Below are positions 3,091 to 33,669 of a stretch of DNA of 64,000 nt, in pieces (the first letter of the stretch is position 1; each line of letters begins with the position of its first letter). Position numbers and translations under genes: made by a program. Below the pieces are notes generated by a model. That model did not search any database, was not told where the DNA came from, and was given only the letters and a program-made list of their open reading frames with translations. Source of the stretch: Hemiscyllium ocellatum (Eukaryota); contig NC_083422.1 in the NCBI RefSeq assembly GCF_020745735.1, positions 21,204,001 to 21,268,000 of the forward strand, in the 5' to 3' direction.

Positions 3091-3139
3091 TTGATCTTGG
3101 CTCCATCCTCTTGCAACTAGATCTTCAGCTTTCTGACCC

Positions 3140-11309: not shown

Positions 11310-11480
11310 ACCTGATCTGGAGAATGCAGCATTAATGTTTTGGGTCTGGTGAGCCTTTTCCAGTTCTGAAGAAGGGTCACTGGACCCCAAATGTTAACTC
11401 TGTTCTCGCTCCGCAGATGCTGCCAGACCCACTGAGTTTTCTCACCAACTTCTGTTTTTGATGGTTATTTCCAATATCTG
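11310..11480. mobile_element. Short palindromic element with back-to-back hammerhead-like motifs (second PLE-derived family)
   Basis: CTGAAGAAGGGTCACTGGACCCCAAATGTTAAC (+) is preceded by its degenerate reverse complement. Related remnants lie near 4905-5000, 6850-6985, 22170-22250 and 35125-35250. Confidence 0.55.
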
Positions 11481-14400
11481 CCATTCTTTTTTTTTAAAAC
11501 CTCCTTGTCTATTATCCTTTCAGTTCAGGAGCTTTGTCCCTTAGATTTATAGAAGGAGAATGTCCAGTCCATTGGCTCTGTGCCAGCTCTTTGCTCAAGC
11601 AGGCCCAAATTATTCCCACTACCCAGTAATATCCTTTGTTTCAAATGTTAGTCCAATTTTCCAGTGAAAAGAGGCAGTAGATTTTTCCTTAATTGGTTTG
11701 TAAGCCAAAGTATTTCACATGGGAATGATCCCTTGTATCAAAAATCCCCAGACATACCTCCTTGGTGGCTTAGTAATAATTTTATATTGACGATCCCTTA
11801 TCAATAATTCTCAAGGACGGATCACAATTTTTCCTAATTTATTTTATCTAAGCCTTTCATAATATAAAATTCTCTGTTAACCACCTTCATAACCTTCTCT
11901 GGTCAAGTCAAAATTGTTCCAGGATTTCCATCTCTCCTCATTATGTAATTTCCAATTCCTAGCATCAAGCTGCTGCATCTACTCTGCACTTTATCCACAA
12001 TGAAGCAGTTTAACGATACAGATCTTGAAGAAAGTCAGTCCGGCCTGTGGGAAGGATGTCAATCTGACATCTGCTGTTCTTGGAGCAGGAAATAAACATT
12101 GTGGGTAGGGTAAATACATTTCATGTTGTTAATGTCGACCTCAGCCAAGCTGTGGACACTGCCATCAAGACAATGGCCCACAAGATTCAATGACATAGGG
12201 AGACACCCATCTCACATTTTGAAGTTTTACCACTTTTGATCTTCTGTTCATCTTACTCAACCATCTGTCAAGTTAAGATGGCCTGGGTCTCCCTGATCAT
12301 GTCTTTTTCCAGTTCTGCATGTTGACTCTTCATTACGCCCGACAATCCATTGGCCTTTCCCCTTCTTCAGGGTCTAAATCATCTGTCTGCAAAGCACATT
12401 GACCTTGACTTAAACAGTGGCATAACAATGCTCCCTGCCCTGATGCAGCCGTACAATGTCACAGCAGTGTCACTAAAGTGCAACCGAAGAGATCCAAGAT
12501 AAATCCAACAGAATGAGAAAAGATCCAGAGGTCTTCAGTTCTCAAAGGATTGGTCAAACCAGTCCTTCAAATGTTTTAATTCCCTTGAATGGCTGATGGA
12601 GTAGAATATTCTGTGAAGGACTACAAATTACCCCATTAGATGAGAAATGCAGGAATGTCCCTCACCAGAATTTCTTAGATATTTTTCTGCATAACAGATT
12701 TGGTTCTGTCTCATTTTTTGGTTCCCTCCTAAAATGTATTCTGGAAATGCTTCCAGTGAAGCAAAGCTTATTCTTTATCTGATTTGATACCTACTAATCC
12801 AGCAACCAGAAATTCATAGAGTCGTACAACACAGAAACAGACCCTTCTGCCAACCTCAGCCATACTGACCAAGCATCCTGAACTGAAATAGTCCTATTTG
12901 TCTTAAGTCAGTTTTGCATTATTTATATTCTCATCACCTGTTAGCATCCTTCATTAGTGCTTCCTCTTTGCTCTTTTTTTTCCTCCCTGTTTCTCCTGAA
13001 AATGTTGTAACGGATTCTATTTTGTTGCATGCACAGTCAGTTGGCATAATCTACATTCCTGCTGTTGTGCAGACTTCCGATGTCAGTAGGTGGCACTGAC
13101 CTCCAGAACTGGAAGTCAATGCATTCCTGCATCGGTCATCGTGTGCATAGTGTACAGGTACCCTCTAAGTAGCCGTGTGCCTTAGAAGAAGCATTGGTTA
13201 TGATCCCTACAGGGCTGATAACTTTTAAAAAGATATTTAAATCTCCAGTGACTGACTGTAAGGATCACATGGCTCAATTTCAAGTTTTTAAAACTTTTAC
13301 TGCAATTAGCAACCTGAAAGCAACAATGCCGAAGCACTGTTCAATAAGCCGCTTAAACAGTGAACTACACAAAAGACACTCAATAAAATTACTGAAAATC
13401 TCCCTCCACTTGTTTTTATGGCATTGTCTAGTCTAACAACAGGACATTTGTAGCGCTTTTTGTTGAGGTTTCTTCCCGTTCCCTCTCCCATCGTCAAATA
13501 CCTGGATAGGTCCTTGATCTGATGCACATGAGGTAAATTAAGACTGCATCCACTTGCTTTAGCTGATGTCCTCTGAGAACTTTCAGAACAGATGTTGATA
13601 GTGCTTTAGTGCTGTTTTAACAAAATATCCCAAAAGTGCTGCTGTTGTGAGTTGAACTTGTTTTCAATTTCAGTGTAGTGATGTGCTCTCCAGTAGCAAT
13701 GAAAGCTTAAAATAGCTCGGAAAATCCTCAGTCATCATTAGTTTCCTACTATTGGGCTGGTTGCTATTAAGAGAAGTGAATGTTGTAACACAAGTTTAAA
13801 AAAGATAGCATTTTGCTGCAGTAATGAATGTTTGGGATTGCATTAATTGGTCTTCTGAGCCTTTATTATCCTTGGGGTGGCTGTTTCTGGTGTGTACTTC
13901 AACCTCTTTTCCAAGATGGTGGACTGAATTTTACTAAAAATTGGCAAAGTGTCAATTTCATGGAGGATTTCTCTCTGTGAACTTCACCGAGTTCTCTCAC
14001 ACAATTCTCCACTGCTCACCTCCCAGTGTAACATCAACCCTGTATGGGTGCCATTTTCATGTGAGTGTGTGCTCAACAGCAACAGGCGTACTTGCCACTA
14101 TCAGGACCTTCTCGGCTCTATGCCACTGACATTGTATTTAATGCTCAGCTGGGCACCAGGTTAACTGCTGTCAGCTAGGAATAACTCTTTACACAAAGTC
14201 TGGTGGGACATAAGCAATAAAGCCATATTCCTGAGGGCACTGAGGTTGATGGGAAATAGGATCTCACATTTGTAAATGTATTGATCATCACATCATCACC
14301 TTCCTGATCAACTGTCATAATAACTACAAGAATGAAGTTACAGTGGCTGATTTTTTACACGATGATATTTTAGATCACTGTCAAAGAGGAGCCTTAAGCT

Positions 14401-15539
14401 TTCTCCAATACCCAGCAGAGCGTAATAGCTTGTCAGTGTTCAAAATGGGAGAATCACATATTGTAAAGCCTTCAGTTGTTAATGCTAGCTCTTATTGAAT
14501 AGGAAGGCCAGTGAATATAAAACTTACCGAAAAAGCTGCATTTTCTTCTGGAGATCAACAACAAATCAGGATTTGTATCTCAGATAATTGGTCATTACAC
14601 GTGTTTCATTGTAGAATTCTATGATTACAGATATCTGAATCCTGGACTGTGGAACAACCTGATGATAATGATTGCCTCTTGGAATGGCTCACAATTAAAG
14701 CCCACGTCTTCATACAGAAAAAAATGCTCATGCTGATCACTCTATGTGTGGTGGCAGCCATTCTTTCTTTCTATTGGATATTTGTGAATTGAAAATGAGG
14801 GTGGAAGGCAACCAAATCCCACTTCACAGAGTAAACCTTTGGCTCACCTTGATCTGGGTGACACCCCAAATCTTCATATTCCTTTCTTCTTCGCATTCCA
14901 TGTCAACTCCATCAGTTCTGAGTTTCCCCATTTTTCCATCCAACTCTTTCAGTTCAGTCTTCATCTACCATGTTACTTCTGAGGCCCTGCCCTACATCTT
15001 AGATATGCCAAACTATTGTGATGCACCATTTACTGTCCCTCCATTAAAGCCAGGGTGAAATTGACCGTTGACGAATCTTCAAACCCACATTAATCCATGT
15101 CCTTCAATGCACTGTCATCTCCCACCCTTGCACATTCAGTTAGCACTCTGTCATGATTATTATGTCCTCTCCATCCTAGTATGCTGCCTTCAATCCCTAC
15201 AATTTATTTTCCTAATTTGCCAGCCACAGCGGTATCCCTGATAATCCTCCTTCACTAGCAATGAACATACCTCTATGGTTGACCGTGGCCTATTTCGTTA
15301 AATGACTTGGAAGGACAGCTCCAGCTCATGAGTAACCAGAGCCCTGACTGATACCTATGCAGTTGTCGATGGATCTATCAACACTACCTGGTCTGGTTAT
15401 ACTGGACCGGCCGGACTGACCATGTCCATTTCCCCAGATTGTAATCAAATGGAATTCCTGGATCCTCACAGTCCAGGTCAACTCACTGTCTCCAAGTCCC
15501 TGGTTTGAGATTAGATAATGTCCTTGACTGACTATGACT

Positions 15540-16535
15540 GCTAGGAGAAAGTGAGGACTGCAGCTGCTGGAGATCAGAGCTGAAAATGTGTTGCTGGAAA
15601 AGCACAGCAGGTCAGGCAGCATCCAAGGAGCAGGAGATTCGAAGTTTCTGGCATGAGCCCTTCTTCAGGAATGAGGAGAGTGTGCCAAGCAGTCTAAGAT
15701 AAAAGGTAGAGAGGAGGGACTTGGGGGAGGGTCGTTGGAAATGTAATAGGTGGAAGGAGGTCAAGGTGAGGTGATAGGCTGGAATGTGGGTGGGGACGGA
15801 GAGGTCAGGAAGAAGATTGCAGGTTAGGAAGGTGGTGCTGAGTTCGAGGGATTTGACTGAGACAAGGTGGGAGGAGGGGAAATGAGGAAACTGGAGAAAT
15901 CTGAGTTCATCCCTTGTGGCTGGAGGCTTCCTAGGCGGAAGATGAGACGCTCTTCCTTCAGCTGTCGTGTTACTATGGTCTGGCGATGGGGGACGCCACA
16001 TCGGGTGCAGCGGATGCAGTAAGTGATGTGTGTGGAGGTGCAGATGAATTTGTGGTGGATATGGAAGGATCCCTTGGGGCCTTGGAGGGAAGTAAGAGGG
16101 GAGGTGCGGGCGCAGGTTTTGCATTTCTTGCAGTTGCAGGGGAAGGTGCCGGGAGTGGAGGTTGGATTGGTGGGAGGTGTGGACCTGACGAGGGAGTCAC
16201 GGAGGGAGTGGTCTTTTCGGAATGCTGATAGGGGAGGGGAGCGAAATATATTTCTGGTGGTGGGGTCCGTATGGAGGTGGCGGAAATGACGACGGATGAT
16301 ACGATGTATATGGAGGTTGGTGGGGTGGTAAGTGAGGACCAGTGGGGTTCCGTCCTGGTGGCGATTGGAGGGGCGGGGCTCAAGGGCAGAGGAGCAGGAA
16401 GTGGAGGAGATGCGGTGGAGGTCATCGTCGATCACGTCTGGGGGGAAGTTGCGGTCTTTGAAGAAGGAGGCCATCTGGCTTGTACGGTATTGGAACTGGT
16501 CCTCCTGGGAGCAGATGCGGCAAAGACGAAGGAAA
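15540..16535 (-). mobile_element. Penelope-like element 3' portion (GIY-YIG region internally deleted) with terminal repeat
   Basis: ORF 15824-16570 aligns by eye to the + copy at 20700-21588. The YIG segment is missing (RCGV|PHRQ junction). A hammerhead-like motif lies at 15641-15667. Confidence 0.88.
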
Positions 16536-16696
16536 TACCCCTTAGTCGGGCGCAGCAGTTCAGGCAGCATCCAAAGTGCAGCGAAATCGACGTTTGGGGC
16601 AAAAGCCCTTCATCAGGAATAGAAGGGCCTTTGCCCAAAATGTCGAATTCGCTGCACTTTGGATGCTGCCTGAACTACTGTGCTCTTCCAGCACCA

Positions 16697-19659
16697 TAGA
16701 ACATAGAACATAGAAGGATACAGCGCAGTACAGGCCCTTCGGCCCTCGATGTTGCGCCGACCGAGTCCTACCTAACCTATACTAGCCCAATAACTTCCAA
16801 ATGCCTATCCAATGCCCGCTTAAATGAACATAAAGAAGGAGAGTTCACCACTGATACGGGCAGGGCATTCCATGAACTCACAACCCGCTGTGTGAAGAAT
16901 CTACCCCTAACATCTGTCCTATACCTACCACCCCTTAATTTAAAGCTATGTCCCCTAGTAACACCTGACTCCATTAGCGGTAAAAGGTTCTTAGTATCTA
17001 CCCTATCTAAACCCCTAATCATCTTATACACTTCTATCAGATCTCCCCTAAACCTTCTCTTCTCCAATGAGAACAGCCCCAAGTGCCTCAGCCTTTCCTC
17101 ATACGATCTTCCTACCATTCCAGGCAACATCCTGGTAAACCTCCTCTGCACTCGTTCTAAAGCTTCCACATCCTTCCTATAGTATGGCGACCAAAACTGC
17201 ACACAATACTCCAGATGAGGCCTCACCAGAGTCTTATACAACTGCAACATGACCTCAGGACTCCGGAACTCAATTCCTCTGCCAATAAAGCCCAGTACAC
17301 CATATGCCTTCCTCACAGCACTATTTACCTGGGTGGCAACTTTCAGAGATCTGTGTACATAGACACCAAGATCCCTCTGCTCATCCACACTACCAAGTAG
17401 CCTACCATTAGCCCAGTAATCCATCATCTTGTTATTCCTACCAAAGTGAACGACTTCGCACTTAGCTACATTGAATTCCATTTGCCACATTTCCGCCCAG
17501 CTCTGCAACTTATCTATATCCCGCTGTAACCTACCACTTCCTTCCTCACTATCCACAACTCCACCGACTTTCGTGTCATCCGCAAACTTGCTTACCCAGC
17601 TTTCAAGTCCTTCCTCTAGATCATTTATAAAGATAACAAAAAGCAATGGTCCCAAAACAGATCCTTGTGGTACACCGCTAGTAACTGCGCTCCAAGATGA
17701 ACATAATCCATCAACTACTACCCTCTGTCTCCTTCCAGCCAGCCAATTCCTAATCCAAACCTCTAATGTATCCTCAATGCCATACCTCCGAAGTTTTAGC
17801 ATTAGCCTACCATGGGGAACCTTATCGAACGCCTTACTAAAATCCATATACACAACATCTACTGCTTTACCCTCATCCACTTCCTTAGTCACCTTCTCAA
17901 AGAACTCAATAAGGTTTGTGAGGCACGACCTGCCCTTCACAAAACCATGCTGGCTATCCCTGATCACGTTATTCCTACCCAGATGTTCATAAATCTTATC
18001 CCTTACCATTCTCTCTAAGACTTTGCCCACCACTGAAGTCAGACTCACTGGCCTATAGTTACTAGGGCTATCCCTACTCCCTTTCTTGAACAATGGGACC
18101 ACATTCGCTATCCTCCAATCCTCTGGTACTATTCCCGTTGACAATGACGACATAAAAATCCAGGCCAATGGCTCTGCTATCTCCTCCCTAGCTTCCCATA
18201 GGATCCTGGGGTAAATGCCATCAGGCCCAGGAGACTTATCTATATTCATCCTTTCCAATATTCCCAAAACCTCTTCCCTGCATATTTCCAGGGCATCCAT
18301 TCTAATTATTTGTGATTCCATATTCACATCAGCAACAATGTCCTGTTCCTGAGTGAATACTGATGAAAAGTACTGATTTAATGTCTCTCCAATCTCCTCC
18401 GCCTCCACACACAACTTCCCACTACTATCCTTGACTGGACCGATACCTACCCTAGTCATCCTTTTATTCTTGACATACCTATAGAAAGCCTTTGGGTTTT
18501 CCCTAATCCTACCAGCTAAAGACTTTTCATGTCCCCTTCTCGCTTTTCTTAGCTCCCTCTTTAGCTCCTTCCTGGCTACCTTATAACTCTCAATCGCCCC
18601 TACTGAACCTTCACGCCTCATCTTTACATATGCCGCCTTCTTCCCTTTCACAAGGGACTCCAATTCCTTACTAAACCACGGCTGCCTCACAAGGCCCTTT
18701 ACACCATGCCTGACTGGTACATACCTATCGAGGACACGCAGTAGCTGCTCATTGAACAATCCCCACATCTCATTAGTGTTCTTCTCTTGAAGCCTGTTTT
18801 TCCAATCCACACAACCTAAGTCATGCCTCACTGCATCATAATTTCCCTGCCCCCAGCCATAGCTCTTGCCCTGCGGCGCACGATTATCCCTCTCCATCAC
18901 TAAAGTAAAAGTCACCGAGTTGTGGTCACTGTCCCCGAAGTGCTCACCTACCTCCAAGTCTAACACCTGGCCTGGTTCATTACCTAGAACCAAATCCAAT
19001 ATAGCCTCCCCTCTTGTTGGCCTGTCGACATATTGTGTCAGGAAACCCTCCTGCACACATTGTACAAACACCGACCCATCTAATGAACTCGAGCTATAAC
19101 TCTCCCAGTCAATATCTGGGAAGTTAAAGTCCCCCATAACAACCACCCTGCTACCTTCACTCTTTTCCTGAATCATCCTCGCAATATTATCCTCTACTTC
19201 TCTAGGACTATTAGGAGGCCTGTAGAAAACACCTAACAGGGTGACCTCACCTTTCCTATTTCTAACCTCAGCCCAAACCACCTCAGATGGCAAGTCCTCT
19301 TCCATCGTCCATTCCACTGCTGTGATACTGTCTTTGACAAGTAATGCCACGCCTCCCCCTTTTTTACCCCCATGTCTGATCCTACTAAAACATTTGAACC
19401 CTGGAACATGCAACAGCCATTCTTGTCCCTGTTCTACCCACGTCTCTGTAATGGCCACAACATCGAAGTCCCAGGTACCAACCCACGCTGCAAGTTCACC
19501 TACCTTATTCCTTATACTTCTGGCATTGAAGTATACACACTTCAATCCTCCTTTCTGGTTACAGGCACCCTCCTTAGAGATCGCTGCATTATTCCTAACC
19601 TCCCTACACTCAAGGTCCTGTACCCTAAAGCTACAGTCCTGGTTCCCATGCCCCCGCAT
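16697..19659 (-). mobile_element. Young CR1 LINE, 5'-truncated just upstream of ORF2 (no ORF1)
   Basis: ORF2 is uninterrupted. The 3' UTR has GGGCCGAAGGGCCTGT and a (TTCTATG)n tail. CACCA is repeated at both junctions (16692-16696, 19660-19664). Confidence 0.95.
16777..19659 (-). CDS. CR1 ORF2: APE endonuclease plus reverse transcriptase, 960 aa, open
   Basis: EN motifs YFNARS, ITETW, FYRPP, GDFN and SDH are present. RT motifs DFSKAFDKV, GVPQGSVLGP and FADD are present. There are no stops. The ATG at 19659 is residue 28 of the listed 987-aa ORF. Confidence 0.93.
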   Translation of the reverse strand: MRGHGNQDCSFRVQDLECREVRNNAAISKEGACNQKGGLKCVYFNARSIRNKVGELAAWVGTWDFDVVAITETWVEQGQEWLLHVPGFKCFSRIRHGGKKGGGVALLVKDSITAVEWTMEEDLPSEVVWAEVRNRKGEVTLLGVFYRPPNSPREVEDNIARMIQEKSEGSRVVVMGDFNFPDIDWESYSSSSLDGSVFVQCVQEGFLTQYVDRPTRGEAILDLVLGNEPGQVLDLEVGEHFGDSDHNSVTFTLVMERDNRAPQGKSYGWGQGNYDAVRHDLGCVDWKNRLQEKNTNEMWGLFNEQLLRVLDRYVPVRHGVKGLVRQPWFSKELESLVKGKKAAYVKMRREGSVGAIESYKVARKELKRELRKARRGHEKSLAGRIRENPKAFYRYVKNKRMTRVGIGPVKDSSGKLCVEAEEIGETLNQYFSSVFTQEQDIVADVNMESQIIRMDALEICREEVLGILERMNIDKSPGPDGIYPRILWEAREEIAEPLAWIFMSSLSTGIVPEDWRIANVVPLFKKGSRDSPSNYRPVSLTSVVGKVLERMVRDKIYEHLGRNNVIRDSQHGFVKGRSCLTNLIEFFEKVTKEVDEGKAVDVVYMDFSKAFDKVPHGRLMLKLRRYGIEDTLEVWIRNWLAGRRQRVVVDGLCSSWSAVTSGVPQGSVLGPLLFVIFINDLEEGLESWVSKFADDTKVGGVVDSEEGSGRLQRDIDKLQSWAEMWQMEFNVAKCEVVHFGRNNKMMDYWANGRLLGSVDEQRDLGVYVHRSLKVATQVNSAVRKAYGVLGFIGRGIEFRSPEVMLQLYKTLVRPHLEYCVQFWSPYYRKDVEALERVQRRFTRMLPGMVGRSYEERLRHLGLFSLEKRRFRGDLIEVYKMIRGLDRVDTKNLLPLMESGVTRGHSFKLRGGRYRTDVRGRFFTQRVVSSWNALPVSVVNSPSLCSFKRALDRHLEVIGLV

Positions 19660-19719
19660 CACCACTAATCCAGAATCTGGTTTCCAGCATCTGCAGTCAT
19701 TGTTTTTACCCCTTAGTCG

Positions 19720-21850
19720 GTCCTGTCCCCCTTTGTCCAAGAACTCCCCACCTACATTCGGGTAGTAGTTTGGCGCACCGACCTTTGCACCACTGAGGCT
19801 AAACGCCAGCTCGTGGACTCTCCTCCTATTGCCCCCTTGATCATGACCCCACCTCCCACCACCAAACCATCAGATCCCAGACCAATCATAACCTCATCAC
19901 CTCAGAGGATCTCCCATCCACCGCCTCCAGTCTCATAGTCCCACAACACCTCACCGCCCATTTCTACCTCCTGCCCAAAATCCACAAACCTGACTGTCCC
20001 GGCCGACCCATTGTCTCAGCCTGCTCCTACCCCACAGAACTCATCTCTGCATACCTCGACACAGTCCTGTCCCCCTTAGTCCAAGAACTCCCCACATATG
20101 TTCGGACACCACCCAGACCTTCCACCTCCTCCATGATTTTCGCTTCCCCGGTCCCCAAAACCTTTTCTTCACCATGGACATCCAGTCCCTGTACACCTCC
20201 ATCCCCCATCACGAAGGACTCAAAGCCCTCTGCTTCTTCCTTTCCCGCTGTACCAACTAGCACCCTTCTACTGACACCCTCCTTCGACTAACTGAACTGA
20301 TCCACACTCTGAACAACTTCTCTTTCCAATCCTCCCACTTCCTCCAAACCAAAGGAATAGCCATGGGCACACGCATGGGCCCCAGCTATGCCTGCCTCTT
20401 CGTAGGATATGTGGAACAGTCCATCTTCTGCAGCTACACTGGCATCACCCCCCACCTTTTCCTCCGCTACATCAATGACTGTATCGGCGCTGCCTCGTGC
20501 TCCCACGAAGAGGTTGGACAGTTCATCCACTTTACCAACACCTTCCATCCTGACCTCAAATTTACCTGGACTGTCTCAGACTCCTCCCTCCCTTTCCTAG
20601 AATTTTCCATTTCTATCTCGAGTGACCGAATCCAAACGGACATTTACTATAAACCGAACGACACCCACAGCTACCTAGACTACACCTCCTCCCACTCTGC
20701 CCTCTGTAAAAATGCCATCCCATACTCCCAATTCCTTCATTTCTGCCGCATCTGCTCCCAGGAGGACCAGTTCCAATACTGTACAACCCAGATGGCCTCC
20801 TTCTTCAAAGACCACAATTTCCCCGCAGACGTGATCGACGATACCCTCCACTGCATCTCCTCCACTTCCTGCTCCTCCACCTTTGAGCCCCGCCCCTCCA
20901 ATCGCCACCAGGACAGAACCCCACTGGTCCTCACCTACGACCCCACCAACCTCCATATACATCGTATCATCCATCGTCATTTCCGCCACCTCCAACGGAC
21001 CCCACCACCAGAGATATATTTCCCTCCCCTCCCCTATCAGTGTTCCGAAAAGACCACCCCCTCTGTGACTCCCTCGTCTGGCCCACACCCCCCACCAACC
21101 CAACCTCCACTCCCGGCACCTTCCCCTGCAACTGCAAAAAATGCAAAACTTGCGCCCACACCTCCTCCCTTACTTCCCTCCAAGGCCCCAAGGGATCCTT
21201 CCATATCCGCCACAAATTCACCTGCACCTCCACACACATAATTTACTGCATCCGCTGTACCCGATGTGGCCTCCTCTATATTGGGGAGACAGGCCGCCTA
21301 CTTGTGGAACCTCTCAGGGAACACCTCTGGGACACCCGGACCAACCAACCCAACCATCCCATGGCTCAACACTTCAACTCCCCCTCCCACTCCACCAAGG
21401 ACATGCAGGTCCTTGGACTCGTCCATCACCAGACCATAGTAACACGACAGCTGGAGGAAGAGCACCTCATCTTCCGCCTAGGAACCTTCCAAACACAAGG
21501 GATGAACTTAGATTTCTCCAGTTTCCTCATTTCCCCTCCCCCCATCTTGTCTCAGTCAAATCATTCGAACTCAGCACCGCCTTCCTAACCTACAATCTTC
21601 TTCCTGACCTCTCCGCTCCCACCCCCACCCCCACCCCCACTCCGGCCTGTCACTCTCACCTTGACCTCTTTCCACCTATCGCATTTCCAATGCCCCTCCC
21701 CCAAGTCCCTCCTCCCTACCTTTTATCTTAGCCTGCTGGACACACTTTCCTCATTCCTGAAGAAGGGCTCAAGCCCAAAACGTTGACTCTCCTGCTCCTT
21801 GGATGCTGCCTGACCTGCTGCGCTTTTCCAGCAATACATTTTCTGACTGT
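19720..21850 (+). mobile_element. Penelope-like element (RT + Cys-rich linker + GIY-YIG endonuclease), frameshifted, with 3' terminal repeat
   Basis: RT motifs MDIQSLYTSIPH, MGTRMGPSYACLF and RYIND (YIDD) are present. Linker CNCKKCKTC and IYCIRCTRCGLLYIGETGR are present. ORF fragments are 20363-21241 and 21040-21588. Confidence 0.92.
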
Positions 21851-23979
21851 GACTGCTGACAGTCTCCCTTTGATTTGTCTTAGGACTGGTTCCACTGGGC
21901 CTCAAGACATGGTAATTTGGTTAAAGCACATGCAGTGTGTTTGCCATAAAAGCTGCTAGCACATGTTGTAGGTGTAACATTGATGTAGTACAGTGCCACA
22001 CAGCAATAGGTCCATCCCCTTGACTGATCACTGTAGATGTGTTTTTGTATGATATTGTGTATGCACTAAAAGGCAAGGCAAGACAGAAGTGATGTGAGGC
22101 TGCATGAACTGAATAGAGTGGCAAAGCACAAAAAGGCATGACAAGGTTAAGCAAAGCAAAGCAAAGCAGAAATTCCAATACAGAGAATGCTGGAGAAACT
22201 CAGCAGGTCTGGCAGTATCTCTGGTGAGAACAATAGGGTTAACATTTTCTTCTGAGCAGCTCAACATACAATTTGAGCACCTCAGAGACTCTTTAGCATC
22301 TATCACACCTGGAGAAATCACTGCTACTGTCTCTGGCTAGCACAGAATGAGCAATTAAATTACAAATACCAGGTTACAGTGAATGTTCATATAACTAGTG
22401 AAATTTTATCATTGAATTTGAAATTATTTCTATGTTTGTGTTAAGGATATAACAAAAATACACTTTGTATGTCAGACTGTTTACAATGATTACCTTACTT
22501 CTTTTCTTTAAGTTTCTTTGTTACTAAATCTCAATAGTATTTTTAATTTATCATACTCCTGACTCCTGTTAAAATGTGCAATCGAAAAACTACTCAGCAA
22601 CTTTAGAATCAGTGGTTTATGATATTTAACAGATCTCAGGTATCCGTATTTATAAATAATATTGAGGCTTTCATTATATAATCTGTAGCTTTTCTTGTAA
22701 TGCGTGTACATGGATTTTGTGCCTCAGGACATTTATTTAATGGATAATGCTTATGCTATTACTTGGCAGTGAAATTACATGCTGCAATAATGACATTTCA
22801 GGGAGACATGTACTCTTATGAATAGCACATAATATATTATCTATGATTTATTATGAAGCTGTAACTAGGTACAGATGAATTCATTGTATTTTACATCAGT
22901 TGGGAAAATGTGTCTGCCATTGTACATTTTATATTAATATCAAATTATGAAATCTTGAAACATTTAATAGAAAGCCTTTATTGTCATTATAAATTCTCAA
23001 TTTTCCTCCACAATCATGTGACACTCTCAGTAATAGACTGTGTATTGAAGAAAAAAGCAAATTAGTTCTTTGTATGAGTAGATTTATTTTGCTCAGGGCA
23101 TATCCTAATTGGGTTATATATTCCAAATTGCAATGAGAAATTAGCCTATCTAATTACAAAATTTTTAGTTTGTTGACCAGACCGTGAATTAAGATTCTTA
23201 TAAATTTAATGTACAGTGACCAATGTCATAACATTGTTTTGTTTTTGACCTGGCACTAATCATTAACCCATCATTTAAAAACTTGTTCCTTTTATAATGC
23301 GCTCTCAAACACATTAATATCCTTTGACCACTTTTGTAACGTAAATTTTCCTTTCGACATTGTCTATTGCTTGAAAATTTATAAAATATAACATAACATC
23401 CATGGACTAAATATTTGTCTCCATTTTGGGTGATTATGGAAGTGGACAAGTGTGTACAGTAACACAAGACTATTTTCCCAGAGGCTTAATCAGAGGAGGT
23501 TGTGGTACACCCTCCCTATGTGGCAGCTAGCTAACCAAGTAGACTTAATTAGCCTTGCAAAGTGCAGTAATGTGAGGTATGTTGTACACTTGCATTGAGT
23601 TCTTTAACATAGAATTACCACTCCCTGTCTGAATTGATAAGTAGTTTAGATTCATTTTACTTGAAAATCACAAACGGGTTTAGTTAACAGACAAACTGAT
23701 GAATTGCAGTAACAGAACAACTTGTTGACCACATCCTTACTCTAATATGCTGATGGCTGCAGTTTTCACACCAATCATGTAGCTTCACTTTGGTCATTGT
23801 TTCATTTGTTTATCTGCTTTTAAAGCAACATGGCTCTTAAAGAGCTAACACAACATCCTTTCTCACCCAAAATAAAATTACATACGCTAAGGTTGAACAT
23901 ATATATACCTTCAGTATTTGCAAAACTTTTCACACGGATCTAGAACTGAAAAATAATAGTTTGAGTCTGTCTATCATGC

Positions 23980-26650
23980 AGTTGGTTTGACAATCCTTCC
24001 AACCTTTGTGATGTTTTAACCTGCTGGAGATCTCAACACCTGGTTGTCCTTTACTTGCACAAATGTTGCTGTCTTGTGTATTGTTAGAACATGGTTGTCA
24101 CAATGATCCTCCCCATGTTTATTATCTTTGTGTGTATTCCATGCACCAATTAGAGTATCCTACAGACCCCTGAGTTGGCTTTTGTTTTTTCTCAATGTTG
24201 TTCCATTAGGTGGTGCAATTTCATACAAATTAGGTTCACTGCACATTTTGGATAGCTCTGTCAGTAATCAGGTTCCATGGGTAGGATTTATCACTCTGAC
24301 GTTTTCTCCTACACATAAACCAGGCTGCTATGCCCCTTCATGTTGGCCAAGCAGATCTTCAGTCTGTCTCATTGTTTGAGAAGTTTGTCTTTTATTTCTG
24401 AGAACTTGGACAAGTGGTGGCTTGACTGGCTTACCCTAACTTGACTTCCAAACAAGTTATTGAGTATATTTAAGACAGAGATTGTAAGTTTTTGATTAGA
24501 AAGGAGCATCAAGGGTTATGGGGAGCAGACAGGAGGATGGGGTTTTAAACATATCAGCCATGATCGAATGGCAGAGCAGATTCAAGGTGCCAAATGGCCT
24601 AATTCTGCTCCTACAACTTATGGTCTTATGCAGCAATTTCCAGTTGGAAAATGACTTCGTTCCATTTTTCTAGTGTTGACGTTTTATTTAGGCAACTCTT
24701 TAGAGAAAGCTTTAGGGTCCATATTTCTTTATCATACATGTAATAGAACCGCACCAGTATATATGTTCATGTGCATACAGAAAGCACTATTACAACTGTA
24801 TCATCTAGCTCAACTCTAAATGTCTTTTGTATGTGAATACTCGCTTTCTGGGAGGGTCAGTTGACAAAATTGCATCTTCTTTGAGATGCAAAACAGCATC
24901 ACCTTTGAAGTTTCTTATGGCATCAAATCTAATTAAACCAGTCCTGGATTATGACAATGTGAGTATGCTTGACTTCGTCTGCTGTGATTTGTTACTATTG
25001 ACAAAGTCACCAAAATACCAACGTTGAGTTCTGTACATGCTGGTAGTCCTGCTATTGCTGGTCCATTCAAGACCAACAGGCAGAATGCATGTAATCTCCA
25101 TGCAGAATTATGGTGGTTGAATTTCATTGTCAATTTACAAATGCACGATGTTGAATGAGCGATCCATACTGCTACTCATTGTGATATATGAACCCTCTGT
25201 GGTATTGCTCACTCACATTTCTAGAGTGACATTAGTAAGAAATCTATTGATGTATACATCTTTCTGCTAGAAGGCTAGGTCTAGATCACCCATTTGGACA
25301 GCAATACCTATTCTTCTATTATAGGCTGTTCTACTTCATGAACTACTCTTTTGTGAGCAGCTGCTGAACTGCTTACCGCTGTGTAACTATATCCTACTTT
25401 AGAACATTTTCTGAAAATTATCTATTTACAGATAAAGCATTTTTTTTTAGTTGCTGAGCACTGCTTGTACCTGTGAAGTTTCTTTGCTCTACAGCACTGA
25501 CAATGACTGTTAGCATCTGTTGTCTGTCTGACTCACTGTACTGGTTCTTCTATCTAGCTCTTATTACCAGGAATATTTAACCATCAATATTTAACACTTT
25601 TAATCCACCTTCTGCCCCCCCCCCCCCCAATCTCTTTTACTTGAGGTACTAATAGTTCTGTTGTCTTTGTGACATGCAGGACCAATGTTCTGTCTTGAAG
25701 TCCTTGAAGGTTGAGTTTGTTGGTATAACAGCTCTTGATCATGTGTGCGTTGTGACACTGGTGAAGACTTGAATGGAGACTCAATGAAGATGATTCATGA
25801 AAAACTGATTTGAAAAGGAAACTTCAGGATTCATTTGAGCATTGTTTCTTGTAAAGGAAGACAAAGAGTCAAAATTCTTGAGTTCCCTTCTGTCAGCTTT
25901 GCTCTCTGATCTAAGATTGAATGTAATGATGAAAAGAAGAATAAAGAGTTTGTTGAAGACAATGCCAGAGGAGAGGAAATTAAGCCTATTCTGTGACTTC
26001 TAGGGCAGAAATTTCTCTTTCTGTCGGTAATGGCATCACTTTGACACTTGCTGAAGTGTGAGCCCTGTGAAATGTAAGCAATAGCATTGGGAAATAGGAC
26101 TACCCCATCATGGACAGCAGAATAAACCTCTGGCTTGGCATAAACAGGAAATTTCTGTGTAGTTTGCTGAGGTAAACTTGAATGGTCTACCTCATCTGCC
26201 AGTGATCTTTGCCATTAACAAGGGGATGAAGATTCCTGTTCTCTTTCCATCTCTTCAAGTTTCCTATTTGCTGTAACAAACAGTTTTCTTCAGCTTGAAG
26301 TTCTGAGCATTTCTGCAACAGAATAGCTATTTTCCTGCATCTTTAAATCTCTTTGTTATGTCACTTGGGTGAAAGCACTGTTGCCTGAGTGAAAATGATT
26401 TTGTATGTCTTCTGAAAGGTTCTCAGTTTCAGCCTGTAGGGCTTGATTGTGCTATGCGGTGCTATTAGCTGGAATATTAGTAATGTTGTTTGCCAGAGGT
26501 AGTTGGATTGTATCTGTTACTTTCAAAATTTGATATGCTCAACCCAGTTCTGATGCTGACCTTTAAGCTTTGCCAAGGTATTCTGCATCTCTAGGAGTTC
26601 AGTGGTTTGGTTTCGTAGACTCACTTAGTCATCAGTGATATCCTATCCCA
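23980..26650 (-). mobile_element. Highly decayed Gypsy-like LTR retrotransposon remnant
   Basis: The minus strand near 24200-24330 reads GENVRVINPTHGT...CSEPNLYEIAPPNGTTLRKNKSQL, like Gypsy integrase C-termini. The remainder is poorly resolved. Confidence 0.55.
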
Positions 26651-26659
26651 TCTCAACCT

Positions 26660-27960
26660 AAACTGGGTTTCATGAGCAAATTATTGCTTGACAACACTGT
26701 TGATGGCACCTTTCACCACTTTATCAATTAATAAGAGTGGACTGATAGAGGCAGATTGAATTTGTCTTGCTTTTTGTGCATAGGATATACCTGGGCAATT
26801 TCCCACATTGTCAGGTAGATGCCAGTGCTATAACTGGACTGGAACAACCTGGTCATGGATGAAACAAGTTCTGGAACTGTGGGAGACTGGCATCTATGAT
26901 GCTGGGGACCACTGGACGAGTCCAAGGTAGATCATTCACTTGTCACTTATGGCTGAAGATTGTCCTGAACGTATTGGCCTTATGTTTTGCACTGATGTGC
27001 TGGGTTCATCCATCATTGAGAATGGGAAGATTTGTGGAGCTGCCTCCTCCAGTGAATTGTTTAATTGTTCGCCACTTTTCATGATAAGATGTGGTAGCAC
27101 AGCAGAGCTGAGATCTGATCTGTTGGTTGTGGAATCACTTAGGTCTATCTGTTCTTTACTGCTTATACTGTTGGCATACAAATAGTCCTGTTTGGGTAAT
27201 GTCACCAGGTTGACACCTTGTTTTTAGATTTTGGTGCTGCTGCTGGCATGCTCTTCATTAAGCTGGAGTTGATCCCCTAGCTTGATGGCAATGGTAGAGT
27301 GAAGGATAGGAGACTGCAAATTGTGCAGGAGTGCAATTCTATTGCTGCTCATGGTCGATAGCACCTCTTGGGTTCCCGTCTTGCATTGCTAGATCTGTTC
27401 AATTTCTATTCCATTTAGCACAATGATAGTGCCACACAAGAATATGAAGGGTTTTCTCAATGTGAATACGGGACTTTGACTCTGCAAGAACTGTGCAGTG
27501 GTCACTTACCAATACTGTCTTTGACAGATGCACCTACAGACAGGTAGATCCATGAGGATGAGGTCATGTATGTTTCTCACAGTTGTTGGTTTGCTCACAA
27601 TCTGCTGCAGACCCAGTTTGTCCTTTAGGACTCAATCAACTCCAACAATGATGCTTTGAAGACACCCTTGGTGATGGACATTGAAGTACCCTATCTAAAC
27701 TACATTCTGCACCCTTTACACCCTCAGAGCTTTCTCCAAACGATGTTCAACATGGAATACAGATTCATCCATTGAAGAGATGGAGGCTGGCTCATCCACA
27801 GTTGAGGCTTCCTTATCCATATTGAACTTGGTGTCATGAGACTTTGTGCGGTCAGGGGTCAATGTTGTGGACACCAGGACAACTTTCTCCTGACTGCAAA
27901 CCATTGAACCTGATCAGTGGACATGACATAGGCAGGGACGTCAGGGATATTGTAAGCTAT
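26660..27960 (-). mobile_element. Decayed LINE (APE-RT, CR1/L2 superclade)
   Basis: PELVSSMTRLFQSSYSTGIYLTMWEIAQVYPMHKKQDK is an RT N-terminal motif. Endonuclease-like remnants lie at 27650-27950. Confidence 0.7.
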
Positions 27961-28754
27961 GATTCGGTGAGTATGACTATTGCAGGCTGTTCGTAAGCAT
28001 AGAAACAGCAGTAAGTCATTTGATTTTGAACCTGCTTCACCATTCAATATGAGTATAGCTGATCAACTATCACTGTCCTGTATTCCTACTTGCTTACTAT
28101 ATCTCATTACCAACGGGGTAATGCTGCACAGCTGTTCTAAGATTCAGCACATGTTGATCAGTAGGCCAACACACTGATATTTGGTTTTGGATTGTCAATT
28201 GGAGTGCTCAGAAACTATGCTTCCAACCTGTGTTGGAAGAGTAACTAACCATAGGATGTGAGTTGGCTGAAAGGCATTAGAAGTATGCTCAACAAACAAA
28301 AAAAACTATAATAGGTAAAAAGGCCACATTTTGAAATGTATTGCAGGAGACAAGGTGTTAGTGCTGCTCCTGTCTCTGGGGAAACTACTAAATGCAATAT
28401 TCACTGGAACTTATCAAATCAAAAAGAAACTCAGTGTTGTGAATTATGTAGTGAGTATTCCAGGCAGGTGAAAGTACCTATGATTGTGACATGTTGAAAA
28501 AATGTTATGACAGGAACAATGGATAGGAGGGAAGTGAACTTAGGGTAATGGAAGAAGGAGGGAGCAAAATCAAACATCAGAACATTTGGAACATGAATCA
28601 GAAATTGAAAATTCACAAGTTGATCCTCCAGCAATCAGAACGAAAAACACTGAGGTGCTTAAAAAGTTAGGTAGCATCGTATTGTGACTTATAGAAAACC
28701 ACCAAAGTGACTTATGGAGGCTATCGCAGAATTCTAAATCAATTTGTCAGCATG

Positions 28755-29130
28755 TGGATTGTTTTCAAATTTCTTCATGGGATGCGGTATCATTGGCTGT
28801 GCTAGTATTTATTACCCATCCCTTTCTTACCTCTTGATCTGACTGGCTTGCTAGGGTTATTTCAGAAGGCAGTTAAGAATCAGCAATGTGACTGTGGATC
28901 TAGAATCACATGTAAGCCAGACCAGATAAGGATGACAAATTCCTTCTCTAAAGGACACTAGAGAAGCAACTGAGTTTTTGTGACAATCACCAATTGTTTT
29001 ATGATCACCATTTGGCAAGCTTTTTAAGTGCAGAATGTTCTTGAATTCAAATATCACAATTTTTGCCATGAAGGATTTGAACCTATCACCCCATTGGATT
29101 GATTCCATATCTTAGATGGCCAGAAGTGGC
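28755..29130 (-). mobile_element. tRNA-derived SINE, second family
   Basis: Reverse complement of the 7455-7750 family. Confidence 0.7.
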
Positions 29131-30288
29131 ACCACAAGCCGTGGACTCCAGAGGACATTAAGGTGTTATCCTCCAACAGTAAAACTGAAATGATGAGCAT
29201 GCAGAAGGAAGGACAGGCTGCAGAGGAGGAAAAGGTCGTCATCACACAGTCATAGCAACTGATTCAACCTTTACCTGAATAGACAGAGTCAATAGAGGGG
29301 AAGGGACCAAAGGAGACAGGGGAGTGGATACCGTTGGGAAGCAACTGCAAAAGGAAAGCACATCAGGCCTCTACACGCCCAGAGCAAAACGGAAAGAAGC
29401 AGCTGCAGGATGGACACACCAGCAGCTCCTCCGATGATAAAGATGTGTGGAGAAATGGCTATCAACAAAAAATGAGGCACAGCACCATGGAAGAGAAGGA
29501 GAGAAGCACCCCTCAGCTTGTAAACACTGGACATCATGAGGGGCCCACTGAAACTTTACCTCCAGCCATCAGGTACCAAGGGTACCCAACACACCATAAC
29601 TCTGGGCAACCGGGAGCAGTGATACCCCAAGTCAGGAGCAGAGCATGGCTGGCCCTCTGTTGGACTCCAAACCAGACCTTCCTGGCTTCGTCTTCACTCT
29701 GACAACACTGGATCAGGGCAATTGCTCCCAGGGAGGAGGCAGATGGCTGCCTCAGTGTAGAGAGTTCACTCACACCATGGGTTGCAGGGAGTTCCCCAGT
29801 GACAAATGGGTTTTAAAATTGCCAGTGTTAATGTGCGTAGTGTTAGATCTACTACGCAATGTGTTTCCATGATGGCTAACCTGGCCTATGTCAACACGGA
29901 CCTCCTGTTTCTGGAGGAGTGTGGGATACTGAACCTCAGCAGCTACAGGAGATGGTTGAGTTTATGGTGCATGGGCGTTTGATTTCTTAGGGTCGTTCCT
30001 CCGGCCTGGGTATTCTGCTAAGGAGGCAACTTCACTATCTCCGAGGATAAGGAGGTGATGGCCTGGCTCTTCCTTGTAGCAAATGTTACAGACAGAAGTA
30101 CTCCTCTAACACTAATTAGCGTGTACACCCTGTGGGTAAAGAGTGTGTGACTGACTATCCTGCAACAGCTCTCACTGCTGCTGGCAACATCCAGGCTGGT
30201 CATTCTGGACGGAGATATTAACTGCATCATCAATGCGGGTGGACAATCCAGAAAGGCTGACAGCAAACCAGACGCCATGTCCAGATTC

Positions 30289-30316
30289 CTGAAGAAGGGC
30301 TTATGCCCGAAACATC
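30289..30316 (+). ncRNA. Minimal hammerhead ribozyme-like motif (best-preserved copy in the window)
   Basis: CTGAAGA-A-GGGC-TTAT-GCCC-GAAAC-ATC has a perfect stem II and intact core boxes. Confidence 0.72.
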
Positions 30317-30415
30317 GAATCTCCTGTTCCTTGGATGCTGCCTGACCTTCTGCGCTTTTCCAGCAACACATTTTCAGCTCTGATCTCCAGCATCTGCAGA
30401 CCTCACTTTCTCCTC
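30293..30415 (+). mobile_element. PLE terminal-repeat-only insertion with 12-bp TSD
   Basis: CCAGATTCCTGA occurs at 30281-30292 and 30416-30427. Confidence 0.85.
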
Positions 30416-32225
30416 CCAGATTCCTGATGGCAATGATTAAAGTCATCAAGCTGCATGACATCTCCAGCAGCCTTGCAGATGGAGTGCAGCGTAGGTACAC
30501 CTGGTCATGGCCAGATGGGTCTATCTGATGCTGGATAAATTACCTATTTGATATTTCGTATATTCCTGCACGTTCTTTGTCAGATCCACCTTTGTCAAGC
30601 CAGTGTTCTTCTCTGACCACTGCCTCCTGCTGGTCCACTGTCACCTACAGGACACCAGCGGGCCGGCTAGGGAACATGGAAGCTGAACGTGAAATCTTTG
30701 ACCCCAGAAAACGTTGAGGAGCTCACAAATGATTCCACAGTTTGGAAAATCATGAAAATCCTCTTTGAATCTCCAGTGGACTGGTGGGTAACAGTCAAGG
30801 AGAACATTAAGAGATTCTTTATCCTCAGGGATGTACAGGAGGCAAGAGAGAGATGGGCAAAAGTGTCCAAACTCCAGAAGAGCAGAACCTACTCCAGCTG
30901 CAGAAAATAGGGTCATTGTCACAGGAGGTGAAGAGCCAGCAAGCTTCGTTCTTTGCCTTGGATAATCTTCCGGTCCATGGTCCATACCCTGGAGCAGGAT
31001 CAGATATGCTTATATTTTTTCTTTCAAAAGGTTCGCAGGGAGAGTTCCGTGCTCAACTGCCTGAAGGAAGAAGATGGCTTAGTAACGTCATCTTAGGATC
31101 CCAAGGATCAGTGAATCTTTTTATATCAGGTTATATAACACAAAGCTGACCGATAGCATGACCTCCCAGTCATTCTTGTCCCCAATCACAGAGGTCTTAG
31201 ACAACAGCACATGGGAGAGGCTGGACCTCTGGATGAGCTGAATCAAGACCCTTGAGTCCTTTGAAAATGAACTCTCAAAAGGGACGGCTTACCAGCCAAA
31301 TTATATTCAACTCTGTAGGACATGATTTGCAGGATCTGCTGGAGGTGTCTTACAACATGCTTTGGTCGGGTAGCAGTGTGAATCCATGAGAAAACGTATC
31401 ATCATCCTCATCAGCCTGGACCAGGAGAAGGCCTTAGACAGGACATCACACACCTACATGTGGGCTGTGCTGTCCAAAATGGGCCTTGGAGAAGAAATCC
31501 ACGTTTTGATATGACTGCTCTACACCAACATGGTTCATGCAGTCTCAAAGACAGGGTGGGAATCAAAAAGCTTCCCGATCAGATCCGGAGCCAGGCAGGG
31601 CTGTCTGTCCTCTCCTGCCTTGGTTGTGTGCTGCGTAGAAAATCTTGCTGAATCCATCAGGAAGGATGTGAGCCTGAGAGGGGTGACTATTCCAGGCAGG
31701 TGAGGCCTGTAGGTCTGTGTATTGGATGATGTCATTGTTTTCTGCTCAGATCTGCTGTCTGTGCACAGACACATGAGCATCTGTGACCAGTTTGAACAGG
31801 CCACGGGAGCCAAGGTAAATCAAGAGTGAGGCCATGTTCTTTGGGAACTGGGCCGACCAATTGTTTATCCCCTTTGCCATCAGGCCAGATTACCTGATGG
31901 TGCTGGGGAGATGCTTCAGAGTGGATGGTGCATGTGCAAAAACTTGGGAGGAGTGCATGGCCAAGATGAGGTAGAAACTGGGGGAGCACCAATCCCTGTC
32001 CATTGTGGGTGAAAACCTGGTCATTAGGTGTAAGATACTCTCTCCATTATTGCACATTTCCAGAACTTGAGCTGTTTTGGTCCACCTTCCAATTCATCTG
32101 GAGGTCTAACATGGACCATGTCCACAGGGGCACCATGTACAAAGGTCTAGATAAAGGGGGAAAGAACGTACCTAATACCGTCCTTATCCAGATGGCCATT
32201 TTTGTGTGCAGCTGCATCAAGCTTT

Positions 32226-32548
32226 TAGATTAGATTAGATTAGATTCCCTACAGTGTGGAAACAGGCCCTTCAGCCCAACAAGTCCACACCGACACTCCG
32301 AAGAGTAACCCTCCCAGATCCATTTCCCTCTGACTAATGCACCTAATACTATGGGCAATTTAACATGGCCAATTCAGCTGACCTGCACATCTTTGGGCAG
32401 TGGGAGGAAATTGGAGCATCCGGAGGAAACCCACGCAGATACGGGGAGAATGTGCAAACTCCACACAGACAGTTGCCAAGGCTGGAATCGAACCCAGGAG
32501 CCTTGTGCTGTGAGGCTGCAGTGCTAACCAATGAGCCCCCATGTCGCC
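32226..32548 (-). mobile_element. HE1-like V-SINE inside Tx1-like ORF2
   Basis: Complete head, V-domain and (AATCT)n tail. Confidence 0.9.
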
Positions 32549-32563
32549 AGTAACACGAAACAA

Positions 32564-32653
32564 GGTCTTGTTCAGGATTTGAACCAGGGACCTCTCACAC
32601 ATTGACGTCACAGTACGCCCTAAGCTAGAATCAGACCACTAGACCAACGAGCC
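32564..32653 (-). pseudogene. tRNA-Pro(AGG)-like pseudogene with 18-nt insert at the canonical intron position (32600-32617)
   Basis: The minus strand reads GGCTCGTTGGTCTAGTGGTCTGATTCTAGCTT-AGG-G-[CGTACTGTGACGTCAATG]-TGTGAGAGGTCCCTGGTTCAAATCCTGAACAAGACC, i.e. 72+18 nt and close to vertebrate tRNA-Pro. Acceptor- and T-stem mismatches indicate it is non-functional. Confidence 0.85.
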
Positions 32654-33669
32654 AGAGGACAACCAACGAGCCAGAGTATACCCTCGCTATGCAAACAACA
32701 AGTGTCACTACGTATTGAGGTTCTACCTGTCCCCGGTGTTGTGAAGGATGAGACAGGTGTCGTTGCAGTTGAACATTCTAAATAGCTGAACCATTCCTTA
32801 TCACCTTCATTCGCAAAGAAAAGCACCTTGACCAGGAGTCCATCAGGAAGTGGTCAGCACATAGTGTCCTCGAGACTCTGCGCAAAAAGGAGATGGTGGA
32901 TCCTGCTGGGTTGTTCCCTGAACAGATTGTCAAAGCAGAATGCCTCATCTGCATTCCAACAAGTGGCAAGACTTTGCTTGGTTGGCGGTGAGAAGGGCTG
33001 TACCCGGGCGATCCTTCACATCCACCTTGACTCTCTGCACCACCACATGCTGCTGTCGAAGTCGCTGCGGTGGGGGTCTGCAGAGTGTGTAGACACTGAC
33101 ACAGATCTCCTTCTGGAATGCGGTTTTTCATAGGAAGTTTGGAAAGACGTGCAGTGGCTTTTGTTGGGTTACATCTGAGCAACTCAGTGACACAAAACTC
33201 TATGCTCTTGGGACGCAGACTGAAACAAACATTGACTGACCTGGAGGACCATTTGCTCATGAAAGCCAGTTTTTGGTCTGCCCGAGATTTGTTGGTTTTC
33301 CAGAGCAAGTGTTGCAGACTGGCACATTCCAAGGTCCAGGACTACATGCTGAGGGATGCACTAAAGCTTGGGGCAGCTGCTGCCAAGATGCAGTGGGGAA
33401 CGATCACTGTCTGAGATCTTTCTGCCGAAGTTAAATGGGGGTCTGTTGAGTTGCCAGACCCTCTCGGTACCTCAAGTGTATCTAAGTACAATCTTGTTTA
33501 AATAAGGAATGCCTTTGATTTGATTTGTTGGATAGAGTCAAACTCCATTTTTTTTTTGTTTCCCCATATTCTACTGCACAGAACCAAACTGCTTTACTGA
33601 TTGTATCTGTATATGAAGATATTTCTATGCATAAAGTATATTTTGAAATAAATAAAAGGAAGTAAGGGC

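What the first reader, a model, noticed from the sequence alone, without database searches (positions are those of the whole stretch)
32226..32676. Unprocessed-looking tRNA-Pro(AGG) with an intron-like insert in tandem with an HE1 SINE: candidate composite retrotranscript
Seen, on the minus strand: a repeated 5' start (CTCT-GGCTCGTTGGT twice; 32662-32676 and 32643-32657), then a tRNA-Pro(AGG) body with an 18-nt insert exactly one base 3' of the anticodon, no CCA, a ~16-nt spacer without a T4 run, then a complete HE1 SINE. The whole block interrupts the Tx1-like ORF2 between ...CSCIKL and YANNKCHYVLRFYLSP. Established: eukaryotic tRNA introns sit at 37/38, and vertebrate intron-containing tRNAs are mainly Tyr, Leu, Ile and Arg, so Pro is unusual. 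Inference: Pol III read-through from an intron-containing tRNA-Pro gene into a downstream HE1 gave a pre-tRNA-SINE RNA that was retroposed via the SINE tail, with an RT stutter at the 5' end. This could be a nascent dimeric SINE, or evidence for intron-containing tRNA-Pro genes in sharks.
Basis: partly seen in the sequence, partly recalled or inferred. Interest (0 to 1): 0.7.

Follow-up and report, generated by a model that had tools for sequence, protein, structure and literature searches.

The report
Pre-tRNA-Pro plus HE1 SINE retrocopy
A copy of an unprocessed proline-tRNA transcript, still carrying an 18-base insert at the usual tRNA-intron position, sits head-to-tail with a complete shark SINE as one foreign block inside an old LINE gene; this is a single example of a known copying accident, and its main interest is the hint that this shark has intron-bearing proline-tRNA genes.

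Summary
On the minus strand there is a decayed tRNA-Pro(AGG) copy (32653-32564). It has an 18-nt insert at position 37/38 (or 36/37), no CCA, and a 15-nt spacer with no T4 run. A full-length HE1-type SINE follows (32548-32225).

ARAGORN calls tRNA-Pro(AGG) only after the 18 nt are removed. The repeated 5' start is real: 15 identical nt occur twice with a 19-nt period.

Shark homologues of the host LINE ORF2 read CIKL-C-VDPQYANTK. The host here lacks only that one codon across the block. So the spacer and leader are not host DNA, and the roughly 451-nt block sits at a single site, without a TSD.

The likeliest origin is a one-step chimeric retrocopy made by the SINE's partner LINE. I slightly favour a reverse-transcriptase template switch from the HE1 5' end onto a pre-tRNA-Pro.

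I found no sign of a composite SINE family: there is one copy in the window.

The intron reading is probable but untested here.

The scan has noted similar pre-tRNA+SINE chimeras and 18-nt-insert tRNA-Pro loci elsewhere in this genome. Those notes are unchecked.

The parts
31970..32224 (+). Host LINE ORF2, left flank; ends ...FVCSCIKL
   Evidence: phmmer finds 37 relatives, the best at 65-72% identity over the matched stretch, from basking shark and whale shark. The family has Exo_endo_phos + RVT_1 + zf-RVT domains. An RVT_1 fragment lies at 31515-31700.
32225..32548 (-). Full-length HE1-type SINE. It starts at consensus position 1 (GGCG...).
   Evidence: Alignment A1 with three other full-length copies in the window. 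There are at least 12 related copies in the window.
32225..32246 (-). (AATCT)n tail of the SINE, 22 nt
   Evidence: Read directly. The same tail is seen in the other copies.
32549..32563 (-). 15-nt spacer TTGTTTCGTGTTACT, read as the 3' trailer of the pre-tRNA; no T4 run
   Evidence: It is not host sequence: the homologues leave room for only one codon between the two flanks.
32564..32653 (-). Decayed tRNA-Pro(AGG) copy including the insert. A box (TGGTCTAGTGG) and B box (GGTTCAAATCC) are present. No CCA.
   Evidence: ARAGORN calls tRNA-Pro(AGG) at default threshold once the insert is removed. Pair count 15/20.
32600..32617 (-). 18-nt insert at 37/38 (or 36/37): candidate intron
   Evidence: It is not a duplicate of neighbouring sequence. 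Its pairing with the anticodon loop is no better than for shuffled inserts.
32654..32661 (-). CTCT leader (32657..32654) preceded by the 4-nt filler TGTC (32661..32658)
32662..32675 (-). Second, partial copy of the 5' end: (C)TCT leader plus tRNA nt 1-11
   Evidence: 15-nt exact repeat; 19-nt period, 17/19 identical.
32676..32741 (+). Host LINE ORF2, right flank: VYPRYANNKCHYVLRFYLSPVL
   Evidence: It aligns to VDPQYANTKCHYVLRFYLSPVL in the homologues, starting one residue after CIKL.

Best explanation
This is a one-off chimeric retrocopy. The partner LINE of HE1 (HER1, a LINE of the 'stringent' type that recognises the SINE's 3' tail) began target-primed reverse transcription on an HE1 RNA inside an old L1/Tx1-type LINE. 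It copied the SINE to its very 5' end. It then switched template onto a nuclear, unprocessed pre-tRNA-Pro(AGG) and copied the trailer, 3' exon, 18-nt intervening sequence, 5' exon and a short leader.

At the 5' end it copied the first 15 nt again, either by a second jump or by a slip at joining. The cDNA was then joined to the host with loss of about 3 nt and no target-site duplication. The block has since decayed and has no function.

Shown: the anatomy, the single insertion site, and the full-length SINE. Inferred: the enzyme, the template switch, and that the 18 nt was an intron in the source gene.
For: - The block lies at a single site. Host homologues read CIKL-C-VDPQYANTK, and here only the C codon is missing.
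- The SINE begins exactly at consensus position 1, whereas most copies in the window are 5'-truncated. That is expected if the jump happens at the end of the template.
- A pre-tRNA has no LINE tail or poly(A), so it could not be retroposed on its own.
- The repeated 5' start with a 4-nt filler shows that copying was discontinuous at least once at this locus.
- Template switching from a SINE RNA to a tRNA by a CR1-type RT has been proposed for PittSINE (PMC5729268).
- The HE1/HER1 pairing is listed in PMC3747384, Table 1.
- Unchecked scan notes report several other chimeras of pre-tRNA (Leu, Lys) plus a full-length SINE in this genome.
Against: - The trailer next to the SINE ends ...GTGTTACT, not in the U run expected at the natural 3' end of a Pol III transcript.
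- There is no TSD to bracket the block. Other HE1 copies in the window also lack clear TSDs.
- The source tRNA-Pro gene was not found, so a downstream HE1 at that locus cannot be excluded.
- The other chimeras are AI notes that I did not check.
Confidence: 0.5

Rival explanations
1. Pol III read-through. An intron-bearing tRNA-Pro gene had a full-length HE1 inserted 15 nt downstream, ahead of its terminator. The tRNA-SINE co-transcript was then retroposed through the SINE tail.
For: - There is no T4 run in the spacer or within the HE1.
- The spacer does not end in a T run, which needs no special pleading under this model.
- A fully unprocessed tRNA part is natural for a nascent co-transcript.
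- The block lies at a single insertion site.
Against: - It needs a source locus with a full-length, same-strand HE1 within 15 nt of a tRNA gene.
- Only about a third of the HE1 copies in the window are full length.
- Such a locus would be expected to seed several copies, yet the window holds one.
- Unchecked notes report chimeras with other tRNAs, which points to a general mechanism.
Confidence: 0.3
2. There were two independent insertions, HE1 and a tRNA-Pro-derived piece, which happen to abut.
For: No TSD brackets the whole block.
Against: - No host sequence lies between them. The host lacks only one codon across the entire block.
- The second insertion would have had to land exactly at the edge of the first, in the same orientation.
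- A tail-less pre-tRNA has no known route to retroposition on its own.
Confidence: 0.07
3. The 18 nt is not an intron. It is an insertion that arose in the pseudogene after integration, or in a dead source copy.
For: - The insert's pairing with the anticodon loop is no better than for shuffled inserts (p = 0.50).
- ARAGORN with the intron option does not call the sequence.
- No second copy was seen by me.
Against: - It sits at 37/38 or 36/37, that is 2 of 71 possible junctions.
- The 324-nt HE1 beside it has no insertion of comparable size.
- It is not a local duplication.
- U32 can pair with the A three bases before the 3' junction.
- Unchecked notes list four other tRNA-Pro loci with an insert at this position, two of them described as 18 nt.
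Confidence: 0.13

Closest known systems
PittSINE origin: template switch from TguSINE1 RNA to tRNA-Asp by CR1 reverse transcriptase (PMC5729268)
   Same: A tRNA-derived piece is placed 5' of a SINE that carries a LINE tail, in one retroposition event.
   Different: In PittSINE the new tRNA replaced the old head and the chimera amplified into a family. Here the whole SINE is kept, the tRNA part is an unprocessed precursor, and only one copy is seen.
U6/L1 and other small-RNA/L1 chimeric retrocopies (PMC4476161; 10.1101/2025.02.02.635956)
   Same: A Pol III transcript is fused head-to-tail to a retroelement copy at a single site, and is explained by RT template switching.
   Different: Those are made by L1, are bracketed by TSDs, and usually have a 5'-truncated 3' partner. 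Here the partner is a full-length SINE of a tail-recognising LINE, and there is no TSD.
Intron-containing nuclear tRNA genes with a canonical 37/38 intron, e.g. yeast tRNA-Pro(UGG) (PMC4090602)
   Same: The insert sits one base 3' of the anticodon in a tRNA-Pro. A short intron at this site also occurs in the unrelated eukaryotic tRNA-Pro(TGG) gene found in a metagenome contig (L001).
   Different: In vertebrates, introns are known mainly in Tyr, Leu-CAA, Ile-TAT and Arg-TCT (from my own knowledge). Here only a dead retrocopy is seen, and splicing is untested.
HE1 V-SINE / HER1 LINE pair of sharks and rays (PMC3747384, Table 1)
   Same: A tRNA-headed SINE of about 325 nt, abundant in the window, with a short-repeat tail.
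   Different: I did not compare it with the published HE1 sequence.

Membership tests
Intron-containing eukaryotic tRNA (pre-tRNA) | A cloverleaf tRNA is recovered once the intervening sequence is removed | tested here: met
   ARAGORN at default threshold calls tRNA-Pro(AGG), 72 nt, after removal of 32617..32600. 15/20 stem pairs are intact.
Intron-containing eukaryotic tRNA (pre-tRNA) | The intervening sequence lies between positions 37 and 38 | tested here: met
   The placement is ambiguous by one base (36/37 or 37/38).
Intron-containing eukaryotic tRNA (pre-tRNA) | An anticodon-intron (A-I) pair and a bulged 3' splice site | tested here: inconclusive
   U32 can pair with the A at -3, leaving a 3-nt bulge. 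That structure is not the minimum-energy fold (-12.4 against -22.4 kcal/mol), and the pairing is not better than for shuffled inserts.
Intron-containing eukaryotic tRNA (pre-tRNA) | Intact genes with the same intron exist in the genome and are spliced | not testable with these tools
Only unchecked scan notes are available.
HE1 / V-SINE | A multi-copy, tRNA-headed element with a conserved body and a short-repeat tail | tested here: met
   At least 12 copies in the window. Full-length alignment.
HE1 / V-SINE | Sequence identity to the published HE1 consensus, and a tail shared with HER1 | not tested
   No reference sequence was on hand.
Chimeric retrocopy by RT template switch | Two RNA-derived parts in the same orientation, with the 3' part carrying the tail that the LINE uses | tested here: met
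Chimeric retrocopy by RT template switch | One insertion site, with no host DNA between the parts | tested here: met
   The homologues leave exactly one residue between the flanks.
Chimeric retrocopy by RT template switch | One TSD bracketing the whole block | tested here: not met
   There is no TSD, and about 3 nt of host sequence are lost. Other HE1 copies in the window also show no clear TSD, so the feature is weak for this LINE type.
Chimeric retrocopy by RT template switch | The 5' partner ends at the natural 3' end of its RNA | tested here: inconclusive
   The trailer ends ...GTGTTACT without a U run.
Composite (dimeric) SINE family | Many dispersed copies share the same junction | tested here: not met
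   One copy in 64 kb against at least 12 HE1 copies. A genome-wide count was not possible.

The most novel reading that the evidence does not exclude
This shark has a family of tRNA-Pro genes (AGG and CGG) with an 18-nt intron at 37/38. That combination of isotype and intron is not known from other vertebrates. On this reading, the locus is a fossil of the genes' primary transcript, with leader, intron and trailer.
Probability: 0.55. Interest if true: 0.55.

Novelty: new member of a known kind. Interest (0 to 1): 0.35.

Why it matters
The block itself is dead DNA, but it preserves the shape of a Pol III primary transcript. If the 18 nt is a real intron, it points to intron-bearing tRNA-Pro genes in sharks. 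[quoted passage not shown]

Together with the other pre-tRNA+SINE chimeras noted in this genome, it would also suggest that the HE1 partner LINE often jumps onto nascent pre-tRNAs. That is the step by which new SINE heads are thought to arise.

Tried and rejected
No read or contig evidence on copy number or on orthologous loci was obtained. Local scripts did read the whole window file, for ARAGORN and a regex search.
- The search for homologous proteins on the left-flank ORF returned nothing. The PDB sequence search of both flanks gave nothing useful.
- Rfam gave only chance-level snoRNA matches and no tRNA match.
- The metagenome scan for tRNA-Pro with any 10-30-nt insert found only an unrelated eukaryotic tRNA-Pro(TGG) with a 13-nt intron (L001).
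- The search of earlier findings by sequence was blank.
- Rejected: the insert as a local duplication (p = 0.4-0.65).
- Rejected: the spacer as host sequence.
- Not decidable: whether the 5' repeat is a post-insertion 19-bp tandem duplication. Its distal 5 nt coincide with host codons, and the two copies differ only there.

Full report
**What is there.** Read on the minus strand, the region runs as follows:
- host sequence;
- (C)TCT + GGCTCGTTGGT (32676/5..32662);
- TGTC (32661..32658);
- CTCT (32657..32654);
- a 90-nt tRNA-like body (32653..32564);
- the 15-nt spacer TTGTTTCGTGTTACT (32563..32549);
- a SINE of 324 nt (32548..32225) ending in (AATCT)n;
- host sequence again.

Each tRNA-Pro motif occurs once in the window, with none expected by chance.

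**The tRNA.** ARAGORN finds no tRNA here at default settings, with or without its intron option, and Rfam gives no tRNA match. When the 18 nt at 32617..32600 (CGTACTGTGACGTCAATG) are removed in silico, ARAGORN at default threshold calls a 72-nt tRNA-Pro with anticodon AGG. Fifteen of 20 cloverleaf pairs survive. A box and B box are recognisable, and there is no CCA. The copy is a decayed pseudogene.

**The insert.** It lies one base 3' of the anticodon. Because it ends in G and follows a G, 36/37 is an equally valid placement.
- It is not a duplicate of neighbouring sequence.
- U32 can pair with the A three bases before the 3' junction, leaving a 3-nt bulge as in eukaryotic pre-tRNAs.
- That structure is not the minimum-energy fold, and the insert pairs with the anticodon loop no better than shuffled inserts do (p = 0.50).

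Structure therefore neither supports nor contradicts an intron. The argument for an intron is positional. A random 18-nt insertion would have to hit 2 of 71 junctions, and the adjacent 324-nt SINE has no insertion of that size.

**The SINE.** At least 12 related copies lie in the window. Alignment with three other full-length copies shows that the focal copy starts at consensus position 1 (GGCG...), immediately after the spacer. Most other copies are 5'-truncated. The focal copy belongs to a different subfamily from those three, with 17% difference from their majority, and is 85-86% identical to two truncated copies. I did not compare it with a published HE1 sequence. HE1 is listed as a tRNA-promoted V-SINE of sharks and rays, paired with the LINE HER1 (PMC3747384, Table 1).

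**The host and the insertion site.** The plus strand carries a decayed LINE, with an RVT_1 fragment at 31515-31700.
- A full HMMER search with the 85-aa piece ending in CSCIKL found 37 relatives. The best, at 65-72% identity over the matched stretch, come from basking shark and whale shark.
- A long member of the family has Exo_endo_phos + RVT_1 + zf-RVT. This is an L1/Tx1-type architecture, so 'Tx1-like' is plausible, but the clade was not tested.
- The homologues read ...FVCGCIKL-C-VDPQYANTKCHYVLRFYLSPVL.
- Here the left flank ends at CIKL (32224) and the right flank reads VYPRYANNKCHYVLRFYLSPVL from 32676. In P0005, P0028 and P0001 exactly one residue lies between the two pieces.

The host therefore lost about one codon. 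Neither the 15-nt spacer nor the leader region is host DNA, and the tRNA part and the SINE form one foreign block of about 451 nt at one site. There is no target-site duplication. The other full-length HE1 copies in the window show none either, so a TSD test is uninformative for this element.

**The repeated 5' start.** CTCTGGCTCGTTGGT occurs twice, exactly. The repeat finder registers a 19-nt tandem unit, 17/19 identical. The four extra positions of the distal copy fall in the host's V/Y codons. It is therefore unclear which of two things happened:
- copying restarted on the RNA (a second jump, with TGTC as filler);
- a 19-bp duplication spanning the junction arose at or after joining.

Either way, copying at this 5' end was discontinuous.

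**Mechanism.** A pre-tRNA has no LINE tail or poly(A), so it must have ridden on the SINE. Two routes give this architecture.

(a) RT template switch: the RT reached the 5' end of the HE1 RNA and switched to a pre-tRNA-Pro.
- For: the SINE is exactly full length.
- For: there is evidence of a further discontinuity at the 5' end.
- For: there is precedent (PMC5729268 for SINE-to-tRNA switching by a CR1 RT; PMC4476161 for U6/L1 chimeras).
- For: unchecked scan notes report other chimeras of pre-tRNA (Leu, Lys) plus a full-length SINE in this genome.
- Against: the trailer does not end in a U run.

(b) Pol III read-through from a tRNA-Pro gene into an HE1 15 nt downstream.
- For: there is no T4 run anywhere between the tRNA and the SINE tail, and the trailer problem disappears.
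- Against: it needs a rare source locus and predicts sibling copies, of which I saw none.

I put (a) at about 0.5 and (b) at about 0.3. Two independent abutting insertions get about 0.07.

[quoted passage not shown] First-reader notes of this scan list three 199-nt tandem tRNA-Pro(CGG) loci (two described with an 18-nt insert at 37/38, the third as intron-containing) and one more intron-retaining tRNA-Pro(AGG) pseudogene in this genome. I could not read those loci, so they are leads, not evidence. I rate the chance that the source gene carried the 18 nt at about 0.85, and the chance that a functional, spliced gene family exists at about 0.55.

**What could not be done.**
- The available runs were Logan contigs of the source species and three relatives, which would have allowed the copy-number and empty-site tests.
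- The metagenome scan returned only an unrelated eukaryotic tRNA-Pro(TGG) with a 13-nt intron.

**Verdict.** It is a new instance of a known kind of accident, a chimeric retrocopy. Similar pre-tRNA+SINE chimeras have already been noted by this scan on other DNA of the same genome. No composite SINE family is indicated. The one point that would surprise a specialist, intron-bearing tRNA-Pro genes in a vertebrate, is probable but needs a genome-wide tRNA scan.

Noticed in passing
window 56516-57029: Two HE1 copies lie head-to-head: 56516-56767 on the minus strand and 56777-57029 on the plus strand. Both are truncated at the same HE1 position and are separated by 9 nt, giving a palindrome-like pair of about 250-nt arms.
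   Followed up: no
window 50868-51355: Two HE1-related pieces meet tail-to-tail at 51042: a full-length copy at 51042-51355 and an inverted partial copy at 50868-51042.
   Followed up: no
window 32603-32610: The 18-nt insert contains the 8-nt palindrome TGACGTCA, the CRE/ATF consensus by my own recollection. This may be chance.
   Followed up: no
window 4526-4834, 46587-46876, 51042-51355 versus 32225-32548, 60204-60477, 56516-56767: There are two HE1 subfamilies in the window. They differ in a block of about 25 nt in the 3' half, with 17% difference between the focal copy and the majority of the other subfamily.
   Followed up: partly
L001:1020-1104 (minus strand): A metagenome contig (Ga0190273_10218387) carries a eukaryotic tRNA-Pro(TGG) gene with a 13-nt intron at 37/38 and a T-run terminator. 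It is unrelated to the shark locus.
   Followed up: partly
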